Positions 2,520 through 37,800 of a DNA stretch of 64,000 nt are shown in pieces. The DNA comes from Auanema rhodensis (lineage: Eukaryota; Animalia; Nematoda). The stretch spans positions 13,640,001-13,704,000 of the forward strand of contig OZ059897.1 in NCBI GenBank assembly GCA_964057225.1. The letters run 5' to 3'. The notes beneath the pieces are model-generated. The model had not been told where the DNA came from. It searched no databases and saw only the letters and a program-made list of their open reading frames with translations. The position numbers and the translations under genes were made by a program. Within the stretch, counting starts at the first letter, position 1. Each line of letters begins with the position of its first letter.

Positions 2520-4505
<1,986 letters not shown>

Positions 4506-4628: not shown

Positions 4629-7600
4629 TCAGCAAGTTGGATATATCGATAGTTCTCTTAGTACATCGATAAGCAGGTATTCTGAAATTTAAAAATTCAG
4701 CATGTATTCTGATCGCTGAAGACATAACCTTCATCAGTTAAAACTCCTTTTTGTTCACAGATTTCACAAGTTCTATTTATCAAATTTTCCACATGAGGTC
4801 TAAGTGCAGCCACATTTGATGCCGCAATTTGATCCATTGTTATATGTAAACTAAAAGAAAGTATTAGGATCAAAGAATTTCGAAATTATTATTACAACTT
4901 ATCCAGCAAAATAAGATCTTGCCCAATACATTCAACACTTTTACTTGCATACAGCAGTAAAAAAATTGGGGAAATGGTAGAGGATTCTTTACAAATTATT
5001 GTTCGCGAAACAATCTAAAAAAATCATAATATTAAACATTTCTTCATTATGTACTTTTTCTGTATAGAGAACTAATGCGGGAGTCTCAGTTTGAACACCA
5101 GAATGTAGAAAAATAGCATGTGTGCCATCCAATGTTATTCCCTTGAAGTAGACCAGAGTTTTAGAATTAATCAAAAAGACAAACCTTTTTCTTACTTTTT
5201 AAATAACAAATATTGGGATATAAAGATGGAGTAAGTACTGCGGTAAGAATATCTATATACATTTCAGAAGATTCACCCTTAATTGAAATATCATTGAAAA
5301 GTTCTGAAGGAAAGTTACAGTGACGCAGAGTATCAATGATTTGCGTTTTCACTTTTCTGAAACAAAAATAAACAATTGCCCTCTTATTTGAAACAACGAA
5401 CGCAGCTAAAGCCACCACAGGAACTTTAATAGAAAAAGATTGCAAAAAATTGTCAGCAGAAACTGGATCTACGGCTTTATTAAGCAGATATGATTGAAGA
5501 ATAGCAACCTAAAATAAGATGTTAGTCAACTAAAAAAAGAAATTTGTTTACAAGAATAGCATGATCAGAAACGCGATTAAACGAAAAGTAAGATTTTGCT
5601 TCAATTTCTGACTGAGTTGAAGAGTAAGGAGATCCAACAGAAATCATTGCTATTAGTTCTATTGTTAAAGAACCAACACTTAAAACATAAAAACGTCCAA
5701 AACGGTGATAACAATAATACTAACCCTAGGATTGTTCCTAGAATAATAGCTTTGCCCATTGCTGGTGAGACAGGAAGACGAGACAGCACTTGTCCTAATT
5801 TAGTTATATTATTGTTACCATCTATTGCTCCCAATTCTAAAAGCATTCTCGTAATATATATTTCAACTTATACAAACGTTTCAAGTTATCTTCTGCACTT
5901 TTAAGGCTTTCTAAATCTGGAGGATCCAAAGCCATTTCTAGAACATCGTGCGGTTCACCTATACCAAGCATTTTTATATGAAGGATTAGCTCATCTAGAG
6001 ATAAGCGTTTAATTTCAGGAATAGGATTATCTCTCAATCTACAAAAAAGCTCATTCTCTAGTTTAACTATTATATTACTATTTACACTTCGAAATGGTCT
6101 TTAGTACATAGATGGAAACAGATTCCAGCTTTCACTCTTCCAGCACGTCCTCTTCTCTGAATCATATTTGACTTTGAAATCCATGCTATATCAAGTTGAG
6201 TGACATTTTGGCAATGATATGCTTCCTTATGTCTAAAGCATAGCTTTATTAATTTATTATAAACTAAAGAAAACCTGCAGGAGTCTATGACATGTGAAAT
6301 GTCGTCAATAGTAATACTCGATTCAGCTATATTTGTTGACAAAATAATCTATAAAATAAAATATATATTTAGTTTTCAGAATGTTTTAACTTTCGTTTTT
6401 GCGCTTTTCAGGAAAACCCTAGACTGCTCTTCCCGTGTTAATGATGAATGTAGAGGATATATATCAGCTATTTCTCCTACAATTGCTTACATGAATATTG
6501 AAGAAAATAAATTAAAACCGACTAATCATCTCATTCGATTCAAGAATGTCTTTGAGTTGAGCAATTTCATACCACCCAGGTAAAAACGTTAAAATAGATC
6601 CTGTCACTTTTTTTGATAATATATTACATAATAGTTCCTGAAAATATTCATAAAATGTTGAAAAAACAAAGAAAAAAACTTTTATCAAATATAATGTTTC
6701 ATGAAGAGGTAAATGAATAATGTTTTTATCAACATGCTCTTCTTCTTCTAACGGTACTAGATTATATTGGTCTTCTATTTTCATCCGCTTTAAAATGTCT
6801 TCAATGAAATATGCTGAAAACAATAGAGAGGTAAAACTACTTATGTTATCACACTTTTCACAGGATATGCGTTTCCGGCTACAGTGATAATAGGACAGTT
6901 ATTTAAATAAGAGGAAAATTGTTCAGAATCCATGGAAGCGCTCATAAGTATGACACGAAGATTAGCCTTATTTTGAATTAACATTTTAACTAAGATCAGT
7001 AAGAAGTCCGTCTGAATAACTACATTGAAAAACAAAAATAATCAAACCCTTACTTGCAAACTTCTCTCGTGAATCTCATCGATTATTAGATGAGAAATTC
7101 CTTTTAATCCTTTTTGTAATTTGCGTAAAAGTATGCCAATTGTACAAAACACCATGGAGCCATAAGGACGAGGAAATACGTGATCTAATCTGTTTAAAAA
7201 AACATACGCCGAAGCATGAAGCATAGGAAGATACCTCACACTGTATCCAACTGAAGTTCCTAATTTCTCACCTCTCTCTGAGGCAACTCTTTTTGCTAAA
7301 GCAATAGCAGCAATTTTTCGAGGCTGTGTGATATAAGCTGAGAACTCTGCTCCCCGACCATCATTCAAATAATCTTCGAAAAGAAATTGAACAACCTAAG
7401 ATGAAATGTTTTTATTACCGAAGGTCTTGAAATTAAGGAACCTGGGTGCTTTTTCCACTACCAGTGCCACCTTTAATTATAACTATTTGATTATTTCTTA
7501 CAGTATCCACAATATCATTTCTGAATAAATTGAATGAGCATTTGAAATAATGGACAAAAAAAACTTCTTCTCAAATATGGGCAGTGTATCGTTCTTTTTG

Positions 7601-11714: not shown

Positions 11715-14186
11715 ATGTCATCTTGGGCCGACGATTTCTTGGAGCAGGAAAAAGCTGAGGCAGCGAGGGACCCATCATACAAAATTGTAAAATTGCTTTC
11801 ATGAAACGTTTTCATATTTTTATTCAGACAGAGCAGAAACCTCAGCAATCTTCTCCCCAACCTTTCTCTCCACAATCATTCACCCCATCCCACCCTTTTC
11901 CACCTCCTCAACATTCTTTTGGAGCTGCTCGTGGTTTGCATTCTAGTGTCTGTTATTATATATAGTTCTTTCAAGGTGCAAATCATGGATTTAGCCCTAG
12001 GGGTGGTTCTGTTTTCAATCCTTCTTTAGTTCCTCAACGAGGAGGTAGATCAGTAGGCTAGTTGCTTTAATTGAATTCTTTGTTTTCAGGTTTTTCTTCT
12101 CCTGGTTTTTCTCCTCGACGTGGAAGAGGAGCTTCTGCTGCACCACCATTTGTAATTTTTATGTTTTTTTTTTAAATATATAGAAGTAAACTCCTTTCGG
12201 AAATTATATGCAATAATTTTATTGAAAATTTCTTTTAATCAAAGTTGTGTTTAGCCTCATCCTGCAGCACAGCAGCCACCTTTAGATGATTCAACCATAG
12301 ATAATCGTAATAAGCGTTTTGGATTCCTATTTTTAATTTTGCTTATAGCTATGTCTCCGGAAGAAATTGCGCTCCTCAACAAATTTCTTCATAAAAAGGT
12401 CCAAATGATGCGAGAAGGAACAGTAGATGTTCAAAAGCAAAGGGCAGACCCTACTAGTCCTCTTCATTCGGTCATAGCTTTCAGAGAATTAAGAATGTAA
12501 AACTATTAAACAGTCATATAGTGATAACTAATTGTTTCTACAGCAAACCTGAACTATTGAAAGCATTGGATTTGATGGGTTTCGAACAGCCTTCTAAGAT
12601 TCAAGAATTTGCTTTGCCATTATTATTGATGGAGCCGTATGTCTTTTTCATGAAAAAGAAATGGATTTTATTTTTTCAGTCCTACTAACATGATTGCTCA
12701 ATCTCAATCAGGAACTGGAAAAACTGCTGCGTTTGTCTTAACAATGCTCTCTAGAGTTAACATTGAGAAGAAATATCCTCAATGCTTGTGCTTAGCTCCT
12801 ACTTATGAGTTAGCAAGGCAAATTGGTTGAATAGGATAATATTAGTTTGCATTACAAAAATGTTCCAGGAGAAGTTATGACCGAAATGGCTAAATTCATG
12901 GGCGATTTAAGAATTCACTATGCCGTCAAGGGAAGTACTGGTGAGTCAATATGAAGAAGTTAACATTTAATTAGTATTTCTACAGTAATTCGTGGCCAAA
13001 GCCTTACTGAGCAGATTATAATTGGAACGCCTGGACGAGTAAGCTTTTTTTTCTTGATTTTGAACATATCTGTTATAGGTCATCGATTACATTACGAAAT
13101 TCAAAGCTTTTGATCCTGCCGAAATAGTTTGTATTGTGTTAGATGAAGCTGACGTTATGATAAGTCAACGTGGCCATTTGGATCTTAGTTATAGAATTTA
13201 TAAGTACTTCTGCATGTTGTTTCTTTCAAACACAATTTATATTTAGTGCTATTCACGAATCTTCTCCTCATGTACAGGCTATGCTGTTCTCTGCTACATA
13301 TGATCCACCTGTAATGGAATTTGCTGAAAATTTGATCAAGGATGCTGTTTCTGTGACGTATGTTTTGGAGATCAATTTTGAGTAAAATACCTATAATCAG
13401 ACTTAAACGTGAAGACCAAGCTTTACCAAATATCAAACAATATTTTGTTGAATGTCATAGCAGAGATGCTAAATTTAAGGTTTGATTGTGTGATAAATCG
13501 TAGTTTTTATCAAAAGTTCAGGCAGTATGTGATCTGTACAGTGGTCTAGTTATTGCTTCTTCTGTGATTTTCACGCATACTAGAAGTAGTGCCGCGTGGA
13601 TCGCAGCGCGAATGTCTGAGAGAGGACATGATGTAAATTGTGGAAATGTTAACAACATTTTTATTTACCTTCGGTTTAGGTTGCTCTTCTTCATGGAGAA
13701 ATGACTGTACAAGAAAGAGCTTTGGCTATTGAACAATTCAAGGAAGGATTGTACAAAGTTCTTATTACTACCAATGTGTGTGCTCGAGGTTTGTTCAAGA
13801 GTGGAACAGAATGAAATATTTTTTGGTTAGGAATTGATGTATCCCAAGTATCTATTGTGATTAATTACGATGTACCTTTTTACATGGATAATAAGGAAGA
13901 ACCCGACTTTGAAACATATATTCATAGAATCGGAAGGTGATTTGACCATTTTATTTCATAACTATGTTTAAAATAACGTTTAGAACTGGACGATTCGGAA
14001 AGTCTGGAATTGCTATCAATTTTGTTGATAGTCCTCATGCTTTAAGATTAATCAAGAAAATCAAAGATCATTTCGGTACTATTTTTGTATTCTTTATATA
14101 TATATTTTTTAACTTATCTAGGGAAAGAAATCATCAAGCTCGATCCTAGTGACATGGAACAATTAGAAGCTATTGAAAAAGATTAG
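11715..14186 (+). CDS. ddx-19: DEAD-box mRNA export helicase DDX19/Dbp5
   Basis: [101 protein letters not shown]. Ends LEAIEKD*. Confidence 0.95.
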
Positions 14187-28816: not shown

Positions 28817-31800
28817 ATGACTAGATATTCATACTACTTAAGTATTATTCTATTTCTTGGAGCTACTATTGCTCACTCGCATGGATATGGAAAGAGTAAG
28901 TCTTTTAAATATTTTTTCTTTTCTTGATTCGAATATAATTATATTCCATTTCCTCTCAATATTTCTCAGAAATCACTGTTATTTCTCAATTTGCTGTACT
29001 TGACACCAGCTACTAGTATTTTTAAGCTATGCCGCTGTGTGGCGCAACAGTCTTATGTAACAAATACTCATTCAAGCATACATTTTGTTTACTTAATTTT
29101 CATAACTTAGTTTTCTTCCTTGAATATTAGTTAGTATGTGCTGGCCATACATATACGTCAGGGTTATATTTAACTATGCACAATCCCTGTGTTACTTTTT
29201 TTTTGAAATATCCTTCCCAATGGCTAATACGAATATATTGTTGCTTAAACATTGAAATTATTTAACATTTCTTACTGATGGTTACTCCGGAAATTGGGTC
29301 TTCTTTTAGTTCTCTTTTATTTGCAACTGACCAAATAAGGGTCATGGATCGTTTCTTAATGAAAAATCTCTTCCCACTGATGAGAATGTACTACCCATTT
29401 GCGTTTAGATTGGTTTTCGCACGCAGCTTAGATTAGTATAAAAATTTTAAACATTTCTGTAGTTTTGATCACGTAAGAAACATCGATTATCGGTTATTAA
29501 CTGCTTTCGACAAATTTTTCACCTGGCAGTATTGCCTGAGTGCATATGTATGGAAGATAATCATGCACCTGTCTGGTTATTAACTGATCAACTGTAGGAA
29601 TTAATGATGGTTATTCAGCATACTTAGGATGAGCATAATTATCCATGAAATGTGCGTATATATACTATCGCAATACTAAGCGTATTCATTGTTTCTGGAG
29701 GTCATTCCTTGTTTCTGCTAGATTGCTTTCAGTAATAACATGGTTTCTGTTACCGGAAATATGTTCTGCCTGGTTTGTGTTGTTATTCTTACAAACAGCT
29801 CTTATGGCTAGTGCAATCTACTATATTATGATACTTCTGACGGTTTCTCCAATTTAGTAAAGAGCTAGGTTCTGATTAGTATGGCGCAAGGGGTACTTAT
29901 TTTTCTGCTTCTGTTTCCGTTACTACATGTAATAGTACTTGCTAAGTGTATTAAGAACCATTCTCTTAACCTTTTTATGAGAATACACATATGTTAAAGA
30001 TTTCGGGTAATCATCACCTTTGTCGTTTGATTATGATATATTTCGCAATTATATATTACATGTTCTTGAAAATTTATAGCCCCAAGAAAAAAGCGTGCGC
30101 TGGTAGTTTCTTTCTTACCGATAAAGAAGGTCACACACAGCGGTCGATTTATGATTCAGATGATGTGTCAAGCCAGTGCTAAAGATAGTGGATTGCGTAT
30201 GCAAATCTTTCCGAGATTGTCATCGTTTGATGCGCGAAAAGCGGTAGACGAAAAGGAAAGATGTAACGATAAGGTATTGCATACGATAACTGACACATTA
30301 TCCAACAAGCGGAAATAAATGAGGAAAGTAAACCGACTAAGCCTTGGGTATCGATGCTTCACGCCAATTAGCGAAAATCCTTTTAACTGAACCGTTTTGC
30401 CTCTGGACGTTCATATCCTGCTGACATCTCACATCGCTGGCACATGCTTGCCATCGGCAGAATATCCATGTCGTTTTAGCGGATAATGTGCTATTCATCT
30501 TGCGAATGTCGGATTGATGAAGGTGGCTTTATTGCTAATTAAAGCATTTGTGTTCATATCGATGTGTGGATGGCACCCTGAGCCATGTCCTTAAGTAATC
30601 GTTGAATCGTCTCTAATATACTTGGAAATCGGATTCTACATTGTATTCTTCACCAAGCAATGATCCACTTAGTGAGTATTGATTGTCATCAGGTCGTTGT
30701 TAGGCTTGGATATGCTATAATTTTCACTTTTGTCAACTAGACGGTTCAAAATCACAATAATTATCTCGTCTTCGTGAACAAAAGTTTTGTGGCATCGGTG
30801 ACTTGAAAGCTCAGCGGGTGTTTGACGAAAGGATTAGTTGTAGTTTTGCCTGTTCGGCAGTCTCTTTCCGTTCAACTATAAGCATATGGCTCTTGCCACA
30901 TCATACAAACCGAGAGTAGTTAGTAAATAATCATCTGGGATCATATCTATATGACTGAGTACTTGACTTTTTTTTATTAATTACCAGCGGATTGGTGCAG
31001 CTTTCGTGTATATAAGATTAGTTTGACACTGTTGCGAACATTGTTCTTGTGGAAAGGTCAGTTGGCATCGGTAAGGGGATATGACAAAGAAAAGTGTAGC
31101 ACTTTCGATAGTGTTTCAAGTTTTGTTTTCTATTTACCATTGGTGTTCTTATATCGAAGCCAGTAACACTTGTCAGTACAAGCTTGTCATTGACACTCGA
31201 ACATCCAAATAGGCTGCCAATTTTACTTTGGCATAATTGGTAAATGTGAACACTAAGTGCGTCAGTAACGGGGTTCCTCTACTGCCTGAGAGCTTTGTCG
31301 ACATAATGATTTCCTTTTCCCTTTCTCACTTTAGTCATATCCAAATTAGCTTTCTACCGTTGAATATTGCAATTCAAGGGTATGTTGTCTTTTCTGGTTT
31401 AAGAGCAACCTGATTATTTTTGCGTGTTGATGAGTAGCACATCGAATATTGCTAAGTGGTTGCATTATTTACGTAAGGTTATGCTTTTGGCTGGAAAAGG
31501 AAGACGATACGCCACGCGGGTGGCCATATAGGCAAACAGAAGCCGGTGGTCAACAACCCAAAATGGGACAAGAAATCATATGAATAGAAGTAAAGGTCAA
31601 ATTTTTACAATTTGTATAATTTCAGAATTCAATAGTCATGCATGCGAAGGACAGGAAGCGTATCTGCAATGCCCTCCGGGACAGGTTATCAAAATTGAAT
31701 TAGCCAATTATGGCCGCTTTTCACTTAAAGTAAGAATTTCATCAGTAAAGAAAAAAAACATTTTCTGTTTAGGTGTGTATCGATCCTTCTGCAGTAGAAG

Positions 31801-34800
31801 ATTTTCTAGATGAAACTATCTGCGGAAATCCCCGTACATTAGGAATTATGCAGAAAAAGTGAGTTTCTATTTCATTTATAAAAGCCATAGCGCACAGGGG
31901 GTTGCATTTGTAAGAATTGAATAATGCATCAATAATGCAATGCGTTGCACTACTTCTTCAATTTATGGGGAAGCGGATCTGTTAGATGGTCAAAATGCTC
32001 AGTTTTAGATAGAAATGCTGTTTAGTGAATGATTCATTCACAATGACTGTTATTCCTGTCTTTGCGAGTTGTTACTCTGATTAGTCATAATGGAAATGCT
32101 CATCATAAATTCTTTATGGCCATATTCGATAGTGTTTATCCTTTTGTTCTTAAATGCCATTGGCATTTGTAAAAGTTGTTATTCGTTTGAGATTTTAACG
32201 AATTGGCAACTATTTGTACGTTTGTATGTTACCTAAGAACAACATTCTCAGCGGGTGTCCAAAGAAGTCCTTGGAATCGTCTTAGAATTTGTCTCGATCA
32301 GATTGTACTCAACCAATTAGGTTATTGATTTACGTGATGGTAAAGAGGATATGAATGGTGCTGTAATATTTTGTCTGAAGTGTAGTACCAGATTGTGGAA
32401 ATTCAAGATGAATATCATCATGATCCTTGAAGCCAAAGGCGTGCGCCTTATTTTGAATATGCAGATTCGATCGGCACTTGTATTATAATCCCCTTTGGCG
32501 ACCGCATGAGGTTTTCATCCACGAAGATGTAGCTCCTATTGTACAGTAATAGGTGGTGCATCTTCTAGGAGAACAGTTTTTTTTTGTTGGGGAAGGCTCA
32601 GTAGGGTAGCATTTTATTCGCGCAAAGCTGTAATTTTCTAGTCAAGCAGAATAGAAACTAGGTCTGTCTGCACCATGTGTTCAACATGGGTCTAATCTCG
32701 TGCACTGTCATGTCCTCATTAATTTTTGGGTGGAGAAGCGTTGTTAAATTCTCGTGTTGCGTGGGTTATAAGCGTTCTCTAAATCTGATTTTACGATTCT
32801 AAGATGAGATACAAGCGAATGATTTTATACATTAATGGTTTCTGACATCATGCAAGTGATGATAAATGTTTCTTGCTGACAGCATACAATGGATATCTTA
32901 CTTATATACAAGCAGCTTGCGTAAGCAAGTATGATATAGGGAATTAGATGACCCACAAGTTGCAACTTTTTCGGTATTCAGTATTTTCTAAAGAAGATTG
33001 TCTTCGTTTCAAAGTATAACTACATGGTGCAGTGACCCGATGGCCACTATTCATCTAGACAATGGGTAAGCCTCGGCACGTAGCAGAATCATACTTACTA
33101 TACCGACAACTTATCTTGCGAAGTTGCCGAACGAAACTTGACCCTGTATTTGTTTCCAATTTGTGCTATTGTAATGCTTTCTTTGACCACTAAACAAGAC
33201 TTTTTTCTTTAGTATTCTACAATTCATTTTCCCCCAATGAGCGAAATAACTTTTTTTCAAACGGTGTTTTATCGGGTTCTTGAAATAATTTCCAATAAGA
33301 TTACAACTTTGAATATATTCAAGAAGAAATATGAAATCTGTTGTTTGGAGGGTAAATAATTCGTTTCATTTTGTACAGTCATTTAATTTTTGTAATGAAT
33401 TTCATGGTTGGTAGAAAACAAGCAGATGACCACCTGGGCTTGTACTGACATTTGTTCGACATAGTGTATGCCTTCTGTCAACCATTTCGCTTGACTAGCT
33501 CTTCTTTACCAAACCTACCATCAGCTGTTTTCGCTAATTGTTTTGTGCATTAGCTAAAACTCATAATTAAGGCTGCGCTTTCAAGCCATCCCTTAGGCTT
33601 CTTCCCAAAAATGTGTCGAATGTAGGGGGTAGAACGTTTACTTTTTTCTTGGTTACTAACAGGCACTTGATTCTAGTTGACCTTGTAGGAATACTGCCAT
33701 GATTGTTTAATTTAACAGCATGATTCCATGTCATTGCTTAAAGTTTGTATGAATAAAGCTTAAGGAACTCATTGTCTGCTGGCCCTCAACGGGTCCTCCT
33801 ATCGGTGTGGTGTCTAAAGAATGCCATTCCAAATTTGAATATGTATCTCAGAACATTCTAAAGTGGTGTGCGTTGAACACTGTTTTAATGTGGTTTCAAT
33901 TATTCTCAGATGACACTAACGCATTGAAGCAAATATTGTCCTGACCAGCTGCTGAATCTTCATACCCAGAAAGTCTTTAACTATGTTCACTTCACCATGT
34001 TGTCGTTCACACTAACTATATCCGATGTTGAACGGCAGGTGGTTGTATGTGTTATGTTTCCTTCAACACCTATTGGAAATTGACTTCCGAAATACATATT
34101 GGCTTTTGCTCGGATGCTAGGTGACATTAGAAAAGGCGTTGAACCATAGCGCTCTTTTCATAGATGAAAGGAAGTGCGCAATGCCAAACGAAGCCATATA
34201 GATTTACACTAAGGGTTTTCGAGACTGATGGATCTATTGCATTGAGCCTTCACAGCTCAGTGTGGAAGAGCATAAAGAAGTCTTGGGGTCAAACGGGTTT
34301 AGCCAGACAAGTGACCTCATTATTCATACTATCCTTGACAGCTTATGAATAGCAATCGGGTGATCAAAAGGAATCAGCTAGGTGGAAAACTATTTTGATG
34401 AATTATAAGCGTCGCCTTTTTTGGGCTACAAATCTTGAGACAATCATCTCTGGAAATTCTTCAGATGTGATGGGCAACGGGAATGTAAATTTATTGTTAA
34501 TCGCTACATGTTCCCTGATCCATGCCCACAAGTCAGCAAATATCTTGAAACTACCTATTCTTGTGTTGAAGGTACAATATATTGAATGTTATCCTTTATG
34601 CTTGTTGTTGAGTTGGTGATAGTACACAGTTATAAGTTATCGTGTAATTGGTTAATACAAAAAGAACAATACTGTTATTTCGTTACTTAATTGCTTATTG
34701 TGTTGTGTTTGTCAGATGTGATGGTAAACGAGAGTGTGCTCAACGTTCTGTAACCGAGGATTTTATTGGAGATGTGCACCCGTGCCCAAATTTCGCTCTT

Positions 34801-37800
34801 CCTCTATATTTGGATGTAACGTATACATGTGTGCCTGAAGGTTTGTGTTGTGTGCCTGCATGTGCTTCGTTTATTTACGCCAGACTATGTGCTTACTTAT
34901 GATTAATCTTTTAGAAACAACGACCACTACCACTACTACTATAGCTAGTACTACCACTGCAGCTAAAGATGAGCACCATCCAGATGTGGTGATTGAAAAC
35001 AAGCCGTGAGTCTAGCCAATTTGTTAAGGATTTACTTAGTCCCGAATTTTTCTAGTTCTCGTCACGATGATGTCCAAAAACCTATTCTCGTATGCCCTTC
35101 AAAAGTCATCAATGGTGTTGAATATCCAGCAACTGCTGCTGGATTTACCACTAATACAAGACCTTGCATGGATGGAGCTAGTGGAGAATCCTGGTGGAAA
35201 TGTAGTGAGGAAGGCTTCTGGCTCGGGAAGTACCCAAATACTACGAAATGTATCAGCGATTGGATTTTCTCAAAGTCTCAATTATTGGAAGAGCACAGAG
35301 AAAAGGCAGATGGGCCAGGAATCGCAGATGTAATAATCATTGACTCTAACATATATATATATATATTCTCTATTTTTAGTTTCTTCGCGATTTGGCTGCA
35401 AAAGCTAGAGGCACAATTCAAGCTGGTGATTTACCATATCTTCTCACATTTATTGAGAAGACTATCACTGCACTTACCACAGAACCATGGGCTCTTAGAG
35501 TTCGACAGCTCTGTAACGATGTAAGACTTAAAATTCATTTTCTTTTGAAATTTATTTTATCTTTAGAAAATGTTCGAACTCGTTTACCACCTGAGTACTC
35601 ACGTTGATGCCTGGAGTGCTTGGCCAAGACACAAAAAAGGACAAATGGCTGATAAGCTATTGAAGTATATGGAACAAGTAATAGCTTGGAGTTCCGGAGG
35701 AGATAAGCCAATGACTTCTCTCTATGCTCGCGGACATTTGTTGGCTCAGATGAGTGATTCGTATGAGGTATATATTGCTTTTTTCTATTTTTAATACGTG
35801 TTTTATTCTAGGTACTAAAGAAATCAGGAGGAAGCTATATTAGCCTCCCATCTTCTCGCACCTTCGATTATATGGACGATAATATTGATGCACCATTGAA
35901 AGCTTTGCGTCAATTTGATGGACGATCCGTTCTTTACTTTTCTGCTATTGATACTATGGGAACAAACTTTGAGCCTGAACCAATTCGTGCTTCCTCTCGT
36001 CCTGATATCAAGCATTCCTTGATTCAACGCAGAGTAGTATCTAATATAGTGACAGCTTCTATTGTCTCGAATGGAATTGTTCAGAAAGTTTCTAATTTAG
36101 TCGATCCCGTAAGTGATACTCAATGCGAGATTTTACTTGATTTTTTAACTTTTAGTTGTTCATTACTTTCGGTCACAGTGCTGATCGTGTTCGCCATTTA
36201 AGTAACCCTGAATGCTCTTGGTGGAATTCCGAAGGACTCAAGGTAGTTTTTTAAAGTATCGTCTATTATAATGTTTTGAAACTTTAGTGGCAAAATGATG
36301 GATGTGATCTAGTAAGTCACAACCTTACTCATACAGTGTGCTCATGTTCACATATGACACATTTTGCTGTGTTGATGGATGTTCGTGGGCATCAATTATC
36401 TGATTTTGATAATCAGCTTTTGACTTTCCTCACATATTTTGGATGCTCTCTTTCCGTTGTTTGCCTTATTCTAACTTTCTTGTGTTTCGTTTTATTCTCA
36501 AGATCTGGTGGTGATAGGTAAAAAAATTTAATAATTATATTGTAAATTCATCCAAATTTTACAGGGTTTTTATTCATAAAAATCTTTGCGTAATGTTGGC
36601 TGCTGCTGAGCTGGTTTTCTTACTTGGAATTTGGAGAACCGAAAATAAAATTGAATGCTCGGTTATTGCTGGAGCTCTTCTCTACTTGTTCTTGTCAGCC
36701 TCGACCTGGATGTTTATTGAAGGATACCAGTTGTATCAAATGTTGGTTGAAGTATTTCCTACTGGATCAAAGAAATGCCTGTATACCTTCCTTGGTTATG
36801 GATTCCCTGCTATAATAACAGCTGGAGCTGCAGTATACGATTCTAATGGATTTGGAACAAAAGACCACTGCTGGTATGCCACAATTTTCTCTCTTTTGTT
36901 CTTACTTTTTTATTTTAGGTTGAAGACAGATAACATGTTCATTTTGGCTTTTGTTGGTCCTGCTGCGGTGATCTTTGCGCTCAACACAATATTTCTTGTG
37001 ATGACTTTATGCATTGTCTGCCGTCATTCCTCTGGAGGATACCTACCTTGTAGACATGACTCTGACACTGGTAGAAACGTTAGGTACGAGTTTCAGCTCA
37101 ACTATGAGTCTATTTCTAAGTTTTAGAACTTGGGTCAAGGGAGCGCTAGGAATTTCTTGTCTTTTGGGTGTAACGTGGACTTTTGGACTGTTATGGATTG
37201 ATGATGGTCATTCCATCTTTATGGCTTATGCATTCACTATTGCCAACTCTCTACAAGGATTGTTCATATTCCTATTCCATATTATATTCAGTGAAATGGT
37301 AAAAAAATGTAATAACTTTCATCCTCATTTTGATATTTAAGATGCGCAAAGATATTTCTCGTTGGTTTGCTCGTAGAGGGTGCTGTGGCGTCGATGATTC
37401 TACAGATAGAAAAAATAATCTTCAGAGAGGTGCTCTCAGTCCATCTAATGGAAGTGGTAGTGGTAGCGGAAGCGAGTTCTTGGTAAGTATTTTCCCAGAT
37501 CATTATTAAAACAATTTGCATTATTATCCTTCGTACCCTCTATATTCCTGCAGAAAAAACTTTTTAAAAAGTCTTCGCCAAGTTATATTTCCACGCAGAA
37601 AGAAAACAACGAAGTTCAGAATTGTAGGATCTGGTTGAAGTGAATTTGTACTAATTCCTTCTTCCAATCAACAATATACAACTATGTATAATTGCATGAA
37701 TTTTGTATAGTAACCCAATTAAAACACCCTTACCTTTCTAATCTAACTAAATGTTTTTATAGTATTGTGATTTAATCTATTTATTTTTAGTACCCATCCT

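What the first reader, a model, noticed from the sequence alone, without database searches (positions are those of the whole stretch)
34465..34840. Tandem mutually exclusive exons swap the C-terminal half of the latrophilin lectin domain
Seen: two homologous exons (107 and 125 nt) lie 144 nt apart, both entering in phase 2 and leaving in phase 1. Including both or neither shifts the frame, so exactly one can be used. A keeps the canonical F-x-DPC...KYL-x-x-x-Y-x-C signature. B keeps all four cysteines but has 6 extra residues and loses the DPC Asp and the KYL Lys. Established: the latrophilin RBL/SUEL domain is a ligand-contact surface (teneurins in vertebrates). Inference: this is a splice-controlled ligand-specificity switch in an adhesion GPCR. 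I recall, without certainty, that C. elegans lat-1 appears in lists of mutually exclusive exons, so the event may be conserved rather than new; the function of variant B remains the open question.
Basis: partly seen in the sequence, partly recalled or inferred. Interest (0 to 1): 0.82.

Follow-up and report, generated by a model that had tools for sequence, protein, structure and literature searches.

The report
Latrophilin lectin-domain mutually exclusive exons
A nematode latrophilin (lat-1) gene really does use one or the other of two tandem exons for the second half of its lectin domain. The same switch is already documented in C. elegans, and what is new here is that exon B in this species has lost the lysine needed for sugar binding.

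Summary
Exon A (34465-34571, 107 nt) and exon B (34716-34840, 125 nt) are homologous, have AG/GT splice sites, share the same phase, and encode Cys5-Cys8 of the SUEL/RBL lectin domain of a LAT-1 orthologue.

Spliced transcript contigs from one public study show all four predicted junctions. B is present in 4 of 4 runs laid and A in 2 of 4. No A-to-B or skip-both junction was seen, and either would create an early stop.

The event is not new in kind. C. elegans lat-1 exons 3a (107 nt) and 3b (113 nt) are an RT-PCR-validated mutually exclusive pair regulated by the neuronal CELF protein UNC-75 (PMC4165533, PMC3627589). I found the same pair in C. nigoni, C. angaria, Angiostrongylus, Heterorhabditis, Mesorhabditis and one unidentified contig.

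The only two + strand (G/U)UGUUGUG motifs in the 64 kb window bracket exon B, followed by UGCAUG.

In this species B has 4 extra codons and reads LYL instead of KYL. That lysine is essential for sugar binding in mouse latrophilin-1 (PMC2430599). Isoform A keeps the full sugar-binding set.

Best reading: a conserved, probably CELF-controlled switch of the sugar-pocket loop. The functional consequence is inferred, not shown.

This scan noted this same stretch before (s1-430820); I saw no note of it on other DNA.

The parts
28817..28895 (+). lat-1 exon 1: start codon and signal peptide
   Evidence: ATG and GT donor. The loose end of the transcript contigs before 31626 matches this exon (table 7).
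31626..31729 (+). Constant lectin exon: Cys1, Cys2, Glu at +1 of Cys1, ANYGR motif
   Evidence: Junction 31729>31773 in 4 of 4 runs. Pfam SUEL_Lectin profile positions 1-19.
31773..31858 (+). Constant lectin exon: Cys3, Cys4 and the long loop1; ends in phase 2
   Evidence: Junctions 31858>34465 and 31858>34716; translation.
34465..34571 (+). Alternative exon A (107 nt): canonical loop2 with DPC and KYL, Cys5-8. Corresponds by position to C. elegans exon 3a.
   Evidence: Junction 31858>34465 in X3 and X4, and 34571>34915 in X3. Runs X3-X6 hold both exons. The upstream exon is 107 nt in all six other loci examined: five read here and C. elegans from the literature.
34572..34715 (+). Intron between A and B (144 nt)
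   Evidence: Never retained and never spliced A>B in the contigs. No inverted repeats and no excess RNA structure.
34700..34707 (+). GUGUUGUG, a match to the UNC-75/CELF element, ending 8 nt before exon B
   Evidence: One of only two + strand matches in 64 kb. UUGUUGUG is also present in the A-B intron of C. nigoni and C. angaria. Element defined in PMC3627589.
34716..34840 (+). Alternative exon B (125 nt): Cys5-8 kept, loop2 lengthened by 4 residues, KYL changed to LYL. Corresponds by position to C. elegans exon 3b.
   Evidence: Junctions 31858>34716 and 34840>34915 in 4 of 4 runs; part of the 3.2-3.5 kb main contig in X1, X2 and X4.
34845..34862 (+). Motif cluster just after exon B: GUGUUGUG (34845), GUGUGC (34850), UGCAUG (34857)
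   Evidence: UGCAUG lies 6-7 nt after exon B in C. nigoni and C. angaria as well.
34915..35005 (+). Constant exon: Thr-rich linker after the lectin domain
   Evidence: Junctions; translation.
35056..35329 (+). Constant exon: hormone-receptor (HRM) domain
   Evidence: Junctions. Matches the HRM regions of nematode latrophilins.

Best explanation
This is the counterpart, in a chromadorean nematode, of the C. elegans lat-1 exon 3a/3b mutually exclusive pair. Each transcript carries exactly one of two duplicated exons encoding Cys5-Cys8 and loop2 of the rhamnose-binding-lectin (RBL) domain of the adhesion GPCR LAT-1.

Shown: both exons are spliced in, each to the same flanking exons. Using both or neither shifts the frame into an early stop.

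Inferred:
- Choice is set by trans-acting splicing factors, not by RNA pairing. CELF/UNC-75-type GUGUUGUG elements sit immediately before and after exon B and an RBFOX-type UGCAUG follows it. In C. elegans, UNC-75 shifts the balance toward the upstream exon in neurons.
- The swap replaces the loop that forms the sugar pocket. In this species isoform A has every residue needed for monosaccharide binding in mouse latrophilin-1: Glu after Cys1, Tyr of YGR and Lys of KYL. Isoform B has Leu in place of the essential Lys and a loop 4 residues longer than the usual B exon. I predict B cannot bind sugar in the canonical way and presents a different surface.
- B appears to be at least as abundant as A in the available libraries.
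For: - Anatomy and frames.
- Lectin homology.
- RNA: junctions 31858>34716 and 34840>34915 in 4 of 4 runs, 31858>34465 in 2, 34571>34915 in 1, and none for A>B or skip-both. Four runs hold 0.46 of the words of A+intron+B, which equals both exons without the intron.
- Literature: lat-1 3a (107 nt) and 3b (113 nt) were validated by RT-PCR, with 24 versus 72 supporting reads and NMD dependence scored 'partially' (PMC4165533). In the unc-75 mutant, 3A inclusion falls by 25.6 PSI points (PMC3627589).
- Conservation: a tandem pair in the same position in A. cantonensis, C. nigoni, C. angaria, Mesorhabditis and a Logan contig, and in gene models of Heterorhabditis and C. nigoni that read through both exons.
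- Motifs.
- Sugar pocket: it is formed by loop2, and K120R and E42D/Q abolish binding (PMC2430599).
- Gene identity: the LAT-1 tree places the gene with the chromadorean orthologues at 100/99 support.
Against: - The RNA evidence is contig-level, from one study with unknown stages and tissues, so relative abundance is only approximate and rare A+B or skip-both forms could be hidden.
- A 35-column exon tree cannot prove that A equals 3a and B equals 3b. All A exons as one clade is rejected (p-AU 0.007), and window A+B as sisters is not rejected (p-AU 0.10).
- Exon B has a GUGUUGUG on both sides. Under the published position rule these predict opposite effects.
- Vakonakis et al. argue that sugar binding is dispensable for receptor RBL domains, so Lys to Leu could be neutral.
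- No structure or binding data exist for isoform B.
- I could not fold the spliced domain with the tools available.
Confidence: 0.8

Rival explanations
1. Exon B is a decaying duplicate (pseudo-exon) that is not used productively.
For: B has by far the longest branch among the lectin exons compared (1.95 against a median of 0.12). Its Pfam score is weak at 16 bits, and the DPC and KYL motifs are broken.
Against: B is in the main spliced contig in 3 of the 4 runs laid, and its junctions are in all 4. It keeps the frame, all four cysteines, good splice sites and flanking regulatory motifs. A B exon is kept across nematodes and is the more-read form in C. elegans.
Confidence: 0.03
2. The switch is real, but the B-specific changes are functionally neutral drift. 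Receptor RBL domains do not need sugar binding, and both isoforms bind the same protein partners through the constant N-terminal half.
For: Vakonakis et al. note that sugar-binding residues come and go between closely related species. The known protein contacts for Ten2 and TOL-1 lie in the constant half. Mesorhabditis B has DSC and Caenorhabditis A has DAC, so the motif varies elsewhere too.
Against: Keeping two exons with regulated, frame-enforced exclusivity across the sampled chromadorean genera implies that the two versions are not equivalent. Lys120 is also structural in mouse, and K120A/R disturbs the fold, so its loss together with a 4-residue longer loop should change the surface.
Confidence: 0.3
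3. The pairs in different nematodes arose by independent duplications or were homogenised by gene conversion. On this view, window A/B are not one-to-one counterparts of C. elegans 3a/3b.
For: The exon tree is unresolved, and A+B of the window as sisters is not rejected (p-AU 0.10). The first 25 nt of A and B match at 18 of 25 positions in the window, against 12-14 of 25 in the other species.
Against: The intron positions and phases are the same. The upstream exon is 107 nt in all seven species examined (six loci read here plus C. elegans from the literature). The downstream exon is 113 nt in five of them. Shared signatures separate the types: upstream ...CPQ(V/T)SKYLE(T/A)TYSC, and downstream an extra residue before DPC plus YL(D/E)VTY.CV.
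Confidence: 0.12
4. Exon choice is governed by competing RNA secondary structures (docking site and selector, as in insect Dscam1).
For: None found.
Against: There are no inverted repeats of 10 nt or more in 34200-34920. The segment 34572-34914 folds less stably than its shuffles, with z = +2.8.
Confidence: 0.03

Closest known systems
C. elegans lat-1 exons 3a/3b (homologous mutually exclusive exons; Kuroyanagi et al. 2013 NAR PMC3627589; Kuroyanagi et al. 2014 Worm PMC4165533)
   Same: Same gene family (LAT-1) and same place in the lectin domain (Cys5-Cys8). Both exons are 3n+2, the upstream exon is 107 nt, and the intervening intron is short (112 versus 144 nt). The downstream exon is the more abundant one. 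A CELF-type UGUUGUG element lies in the intervening intron (seen here in C. nigoni and C. angaria). The skip-both product is truncated (C. elegans isoform c).
   Different: The downstream exon is 125 nt here, not 113. It has LYL instead of KYL and VH inserted into DPC. In Caenorhabditis the downstream exon is the canonical one and the upstream exon has DAC. This species keeps Glu after Cys1, whereas Caenorhabditis has Asp. Only here, therefore, does the swap toggle a complete against an incomplete sugar-binding set.
Mouse latrophilin-1 RBL domain (PDB 2JX9/2JXA; Vakonakis et al. 2008, PMC2430599) and fish/urchin rhamnose-binding lectins (CSL3 2ZX0, 5H4S)
   Same: Eight-cysteine SUEL/RBL fold. 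Exon A aligns to the C-terminal 34 residues of these domains with E from 4e-15 to 8e-6 and keeps PDPCP...KYL.
   Different: These domains are single-form. Exon B matches only weakly (E 0.005 to 1) and lacks the Lys that H-bonds the sugar and stabilises loop2.
Vertebrate latrophilin and teneurin alternative splicing (Lphn SSA insert between Lec and Olf; Tenm beta-propeller insert; Boucard 2014, Li 2020)
   Same: Alternative splicing in the extracellular region of the latrophilin-teneurin axis is used to tune partner binding.
   Different: Those are small cassette inserts outside the lectin fold. Here half of the lectin fold itself is exchanged by mutually exclusive exons.

Membership tests
Homologous mutually exclusive exon cluster | Tandem exons that are homologous to each other | tested here: met
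   Both map to SUEL_Lectin profile positions 47-80. The DNA alignment, including flanks, has mean column identity of 72%. The four Cys are in register.
Homologous mutually exclusive exon cluster | Either exon preserves the frame; both or neither disrupts it | tested here: met
   A-only and B-only are open. A+B stops at residue 138 and skip-both at residue 101.
Homologous mutually exclusive exon cluster | Transcripts contain exactly one of the exons | tested here: met
   All four single-inclusion junctions were seen, with no A>B or 31858>34915 junction. This is contig-level evidence only, so rare forms could be missed.
Counterpart of C. elegans lat-1 exon 3a/3b | Host gene is the LAT-1 orthologue (RBL + HRM + GAIN/GPS + 7TM) | tested here: met
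   Domain order is visible in the translations. The protein groups with chromadorean LAT-1 at 100/99 support, with Trichinella outside.
Counterpart of C. elegans lat-1 exon 3a/3b | Same intron positions, phases and exon sizes | tested here: met
   The upstream exon is 107 nt in the window, in five other loci read here, and in C. elegans. The downstream exon is 113 nt in five species, 107 nt in Mesorhabditis and 125 nt here.
Counterpart of C. elegans lat-1 exon 3a/3b | Exon phylogeny: A with 3a, B with 3b | tested here: inconclusive
   The 35-column tree is unresolved. The B-clade is not rejected (p-AU 0.098), the A-clade is rejected (p-AU 0.007), and B of the window has a very long branch.
SUEL/RBL lectin domain (PF02140), sugar-binding competent | Eight cysteines; YGR, DPC and KYL motifs; Glu at +1 of Cys1; loop2 Lys | tested here: met
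   This row applies to isoform A: ACEGQ, ANYGR, PDPCP and SKYL are all present. The criteria come from PMC2430599 and PMC3269628. Actual binding was not tested.
SUEL/RBL lectin domain (PF02140), sugar-binding competent | Loop2 Lys (KYL) and an intact DPC motif | tested here: not met
   This row applies to isoform B: it has LPLYL and GDVHPC. It still has the RBL cysteine framework, so it belongs to the fold but not to the sugar-competent subset.
UNC-75/CELF-regulated exon | (G/U)UGUUGUG element in a flanking intron | tested here: met
   Matches at 34700 and 34845 are the only + strand matches in 64 kb. By my own estimate, about 0.007 would be expected in the 218 nt of flanking intron.
UNC-75/CELF-regulated exon | Exon ratio changes when the CELF protein is lost; the protein binds the element | not testable with these tools
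   Shown only for C. elegans lat-1 (PMC3627589).
RNA-structure (docking/selector) controlled mutually exclusive exons | Conserved complementary intronic elements | tested here: not met
   No inverted repeats. Folding z-score is +2.8.

The most novel reading that the evidence does not exclude
In this lineage the conserved lat-1 exon switch may have become an on/off switch for lectin activity. Isoform A would be a complete, sugar-competent RBL domain, perhaps restricted to neurons by CELF. Isoform B would be the predominant form, lectin-dead with a remodelled loop2 that binds a different, non-glycan partner. One adhesion GPCR would then read glycan and protein cues in different tissues.
Probability: 0.25. 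Interest if true: 0.6.

Novelty: new member of a known kind. Interest (0 to 1): 0.4.

Why it matters
The lat-1 3a/3b switch appears in splicing lists, but I found no mention of it in the latrophilin papers I read. The TOL-1 complex structure used isoform a, which carries exon 3b, and the reviews I read do not discuss the pair.

The pair is kept across the chromadorean nematodes sampled, and it exchanges exactly the loop that forms the sugar pocket. This species offers a natural contrast between a complete and a Lys-less pocket. That gives a concrete, testable handle on an open question: whether the RBL domain of latrophilins works as a lectin or as a protein-binding module. LAT-1 is also implicated in the action of the anthelmintic emodepside, so isoform content may matter for parasite pharmacology.

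The finding also flags annotation errors. Exon A is missing from the A. cantonensis gene model, and both exons are read through in the C. nigoni and Heterorhabditis models.

Tried and rejected
- Close relatives of this species: the exhaustive representative search with the HRM exon gave only 22 weak hits, the best at 44% identity. No close relative is in the library, so dN/dS on exon B could not be computed.
- Profile search seeded with window exons: it found Mesorhabditis, Trichinella and arthropod latrophilins, but nothing close to this species.
- Loci that could not be fetched: Trichinella (three look-ups) and C. elegans were not on record. Whether the pair exists in clade I is therefore untested; the annotated Trichinella proteins show one A-length exon.
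- Exon phylogeny: too few columns, unresolved.
- RNA-structure control: rejected.
- A third exon copy: none in the window.
- Structure prediction of the two spliced lectin domains: not attempted.
- Species identity: not established. Run and organism names are coded.
Full report
**What is in the sequence**

The + strand from 28817 onward encodes a latrophilin. The order is a signal-peptide exon (28817-28895), two exons for the first half of a SUEL/RBL lectin domain (31626-31729 and 31773-31858), a Thr-rich linker exon (34915-35005), then HRM, GAIN/GPS and 7TM exons.

- Exon A is 34465-34571 (107 nt).
- Exon B is 34716-34840 (125 nt).
- They are 144 nt apart. Each follows a cag acceptor and precedes a gt donor.

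Both translate, in the same phase, to the Cys5-Cys8 part of the lectin domain. Both hit positions 47-80 of Pfam PF02140, with A at 34.9 bits and B at 16 bits. No third copy exists in the window.

With A or B alone the frame stays open. With both it stops at residue 138, and with neither at residue 101.

**Are both exons used?**

Four runs from one study hold this locus as contigs with the introns removed at GT..AG boundaries. This means they derive from spliced RNA.
- Junctions 31858>34716 and 34840>34915 (exon B) are present in all four runs. B is part of the 3.2-3.5 kb main contig in X1, X2 and X4.
- Junction 31858>34465 (exon A) is present in X3 and X4, and 34571>34915 in X3. These appear as short unitigs parallel to a B unitig, which is the assembly-graph bubble expected for alternative exons.
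- No A>B junction and no 31858>34915 junction was reported.

A second look-up with A+intron+B found four runs (X3-X6) holding 0.46 of the sampled words. That is the share expected if both exons but not the intron are present.

Unitig depths are 7.4 for A against 12 for B in X3, and A is absent from the X1 and X2 contigs. This suggests B is at least as abundant as A. However, contigs are a poor measure of level, all runs come from one study, and the stages are unknown.

**It is already known in C. elegans**

Kuroyanagi et al. validated lat-1 exons 3a (107 nt) and 3b (113 nt, with a 112-nt intron between) by RT-PCR as homologous mutually exclusive exons.
- There were 24 and 72 supporting reads respectively in L1 larvae.
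- Double-inclusion and skipping forms rose slightly in an NMD mutant (PMC4165533, Table 1).
- The same group showed that loss of the neuronal CELF protein UNC-75 lowers 3A inclusion by 25.6 points (PMC3627589, Table 1). UNC-75 acts through (G/U)UGUUGUG elements, repressing exons when upstream and activating them when downstream.

Database proteins confirm the assignments:
- C. elegans isoform b carries the 35-residue 3a peptide, which has DDACP...SKYLE.
- The isoform-a construct crystallised with TOL-1 (8SUF) carries the 37-residue 3b peptide, which has EDPCPNTPKYLE.
- Isoform c is the truncated skip-both product.

**Conservation**

I fetched genomic loci and found the same tandem pair, in the same phase, in the following:

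| Source | Locus | Exon A | Exon B | Note |
|---|---|---|---|---|
| Angiostrongylus cantonensis | L001 | 13060-13166 | 13332-13444 | A is unannotated |
| Caenorhabditis nigoni | L004 | 6836-6942 | 7106-7218 | |
| C. angaria | L005 | 5102-5208 | 5312-5424 | |
| Mesorhabditis spiculigera | L006 | 5133-5239 | 5721-5827 | |
| Unidentified Logan contig | L002 | 3474-3580 | 3820-3932 | |

The Heterorhabditis and C. nigoni gene models read through both exons.

The upstream exon is 107 nt everywhere. The downstream exon is 113 nt in five species, 107 nt in Mesorhabditis and 125 nt only here.

Single-exon latrophilins of arthropods, fish and the annotated Trichinella proteins have the A-type length. 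A tree of the extracellular region places the window's protein with the chromadorean LAT-1 sequences (100/99 support), with Trichinella outside. Its branch is long and its identity to any sampled species is at most 35%.

A tree of the exon peptides alone (35 columns) is unresolved. The one-to-one correspondence of A with 3a and B with 3b therefore rests on position, exon size and shared sequence signatures, not on phylogeny. Exon B of the window has the longest branch by far (1.95 against a median of 0.12).

**How the choice is probably made**

There are no inverted repeats around the exons, and the region folds less well than its shuffles. A docking/selector RNA mechanism is therefore unlikely. 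The 144-nt intron is also long enough to be spliced, so steric exclusion does not apply.

Exclusivity is enforced at least by the frame: other forms carry early stops, as with C. elegans isoform c.

The (G/U)UGUUGUG pattern occurs four times in the 64 kb window, which is the chance number. However, its only two + strand matches are at 34700, ending 8 nt before exon B, and at 34845, starting 5 nt after it. These are followed by GUGUGC (34850) and UGCAUG (34857).

C. nigoni and C. angaria also have UUGUUGUG in the A-B intron and UGCAUG 6-7 nt after exon B. A. cantonensis and L002 have only partial matches.

Together with the C. elegans genetics, this supports CELF-type control, and perhaps RBFOX-type control. 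This is inference. The presence of an element on both sides of B predicts opposing effects, and I cannot resolve that.

**What the swap changes**

RBL domains have disulfides Cys1-3, 2-8, 4-7 and 5-6. The alternative exon therefore supplies one internal disulfide and two that staple it to the constant half. Both versions keep all four cysteines.

In mouse latrophilin-1 (PMC2430599):
- The sugar pocket is formed mainly by loop2 (PDPCPG..K).
- Lys120 and the Gly117 backbone bond to rhamnose, together with Glu42 (the residue after Cys1) and Tyr63.
- K120R and E42D/Q abolish binding.
- Lys120 is also a buried structural residue.

The window's constant half has Glu after Cys1 and ANYGR. Isoform A (PDPCPQVSKYL) therefore has the full set. 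Isoform B reads GDVHPCPNFALPLYL: two residues are inserted into DPC, two more before the KYL position, and Leu replaces the Lys.

By contrast, Caenorhabditis has Asp after Cys1 and keeps Lys in both exons.

The protein contacts known for the lectin domain lie in the constant half. These are Lphn3 R44, D49, D67 and C36-C66 with teneurin-2, and LAT-1 F69 and D79 with TOL-1. A teneurin glycan, however, inserts into the sugar pocket.

My reading is that the switch exchanges the pocket loop rather than the main protein-contact face. In this species it toggles between a sugar-competent form and a sugar-incompetent, enlarged loop. This is an inference from homology. Vakonakis et al. themselves argue that sugar binding may be dispensable in receptor RBL domains, which is the main rival reading (neutral drift).

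**Verdict**

The finding is a real, expressed, frame-enforced mutually exclusive exon pair. It is the counterpart of a pair already validated in C. elegans, so it is a new member of a known kind.

- conservation of the pair across several nematode genera;
- conserved flanking CELF/RBFOX-type motifs;
- the species-specific loss of the loop2 lysine in the apparently predominant exon B.

The functional meaning of the two isoforms remains open and is directly testable.

Noticed in passing
L001:13060-13166 (Angiostrongylus cantonensis, GCA_009735665.1): The A-type lectin exon (CEGLRRC...DPCPETSKYLEATFHC) is intact, with AG/GT sites, but is absent from the deposited gene model KAE9418429.1, which uses only the B exon.
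   Followed up: partly
P0039 (C. nigoni, 1060 aa) and P0003 (Heterorhabditis bacteriophora, 257 aa): Both gene models read straight through exon A, the intervening intron and exon B. This produces a protein with a duplicated half-lectin that probably does not exist.
   Followed up: partly
L002:3474-3932 (Logan contig SRR25018404_12143, organism unknown): This contig has the same 107/113-nt tandem exon pair, with both exons carrying DPC and KYL. Its N-terminal lectin half reads RANYGRFS, as in the arthropod proteins seen here, not LGNYGR/LANYGR as in the nematode proteins seen here. If the source is not a nematode, the pair would be older than the phylum.
   Followed up: no
L003:5181-5514 (GCA_041192925.1): This latrophilin-like locus has a single C-terminal lectin exon and no tandem duplicate within the 7.9 kb contig.
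   Followed up: no
window:32738-32962 and 33481-33698: Low-depth contigs (depth about 3) from runs X1 and X2 lie inside the 2.6 kb intron upstream of exon A. They could be unspliced pre-mRNA or a small independent transcript.
   Followed up: no
window:34465-34489 vs 34716-34740: The first 25 nt of exons A and B match at 18 of 25 positions here (CDGQREC against CDGKREC), compared with 12-14 of 25 in the five other loci. This could reflect partial gene conversion at the 5' end of the exons, or stronger constraint.
   Followed up: partly
L006:5828-5850 (Mesorhabditis): Exon B is followed by a UG-rich stretch beginning GTTTGTGT. This resembles the GTTTGTGTTGTGTG that starts the intron after exon B in the window.
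   Followed up: no
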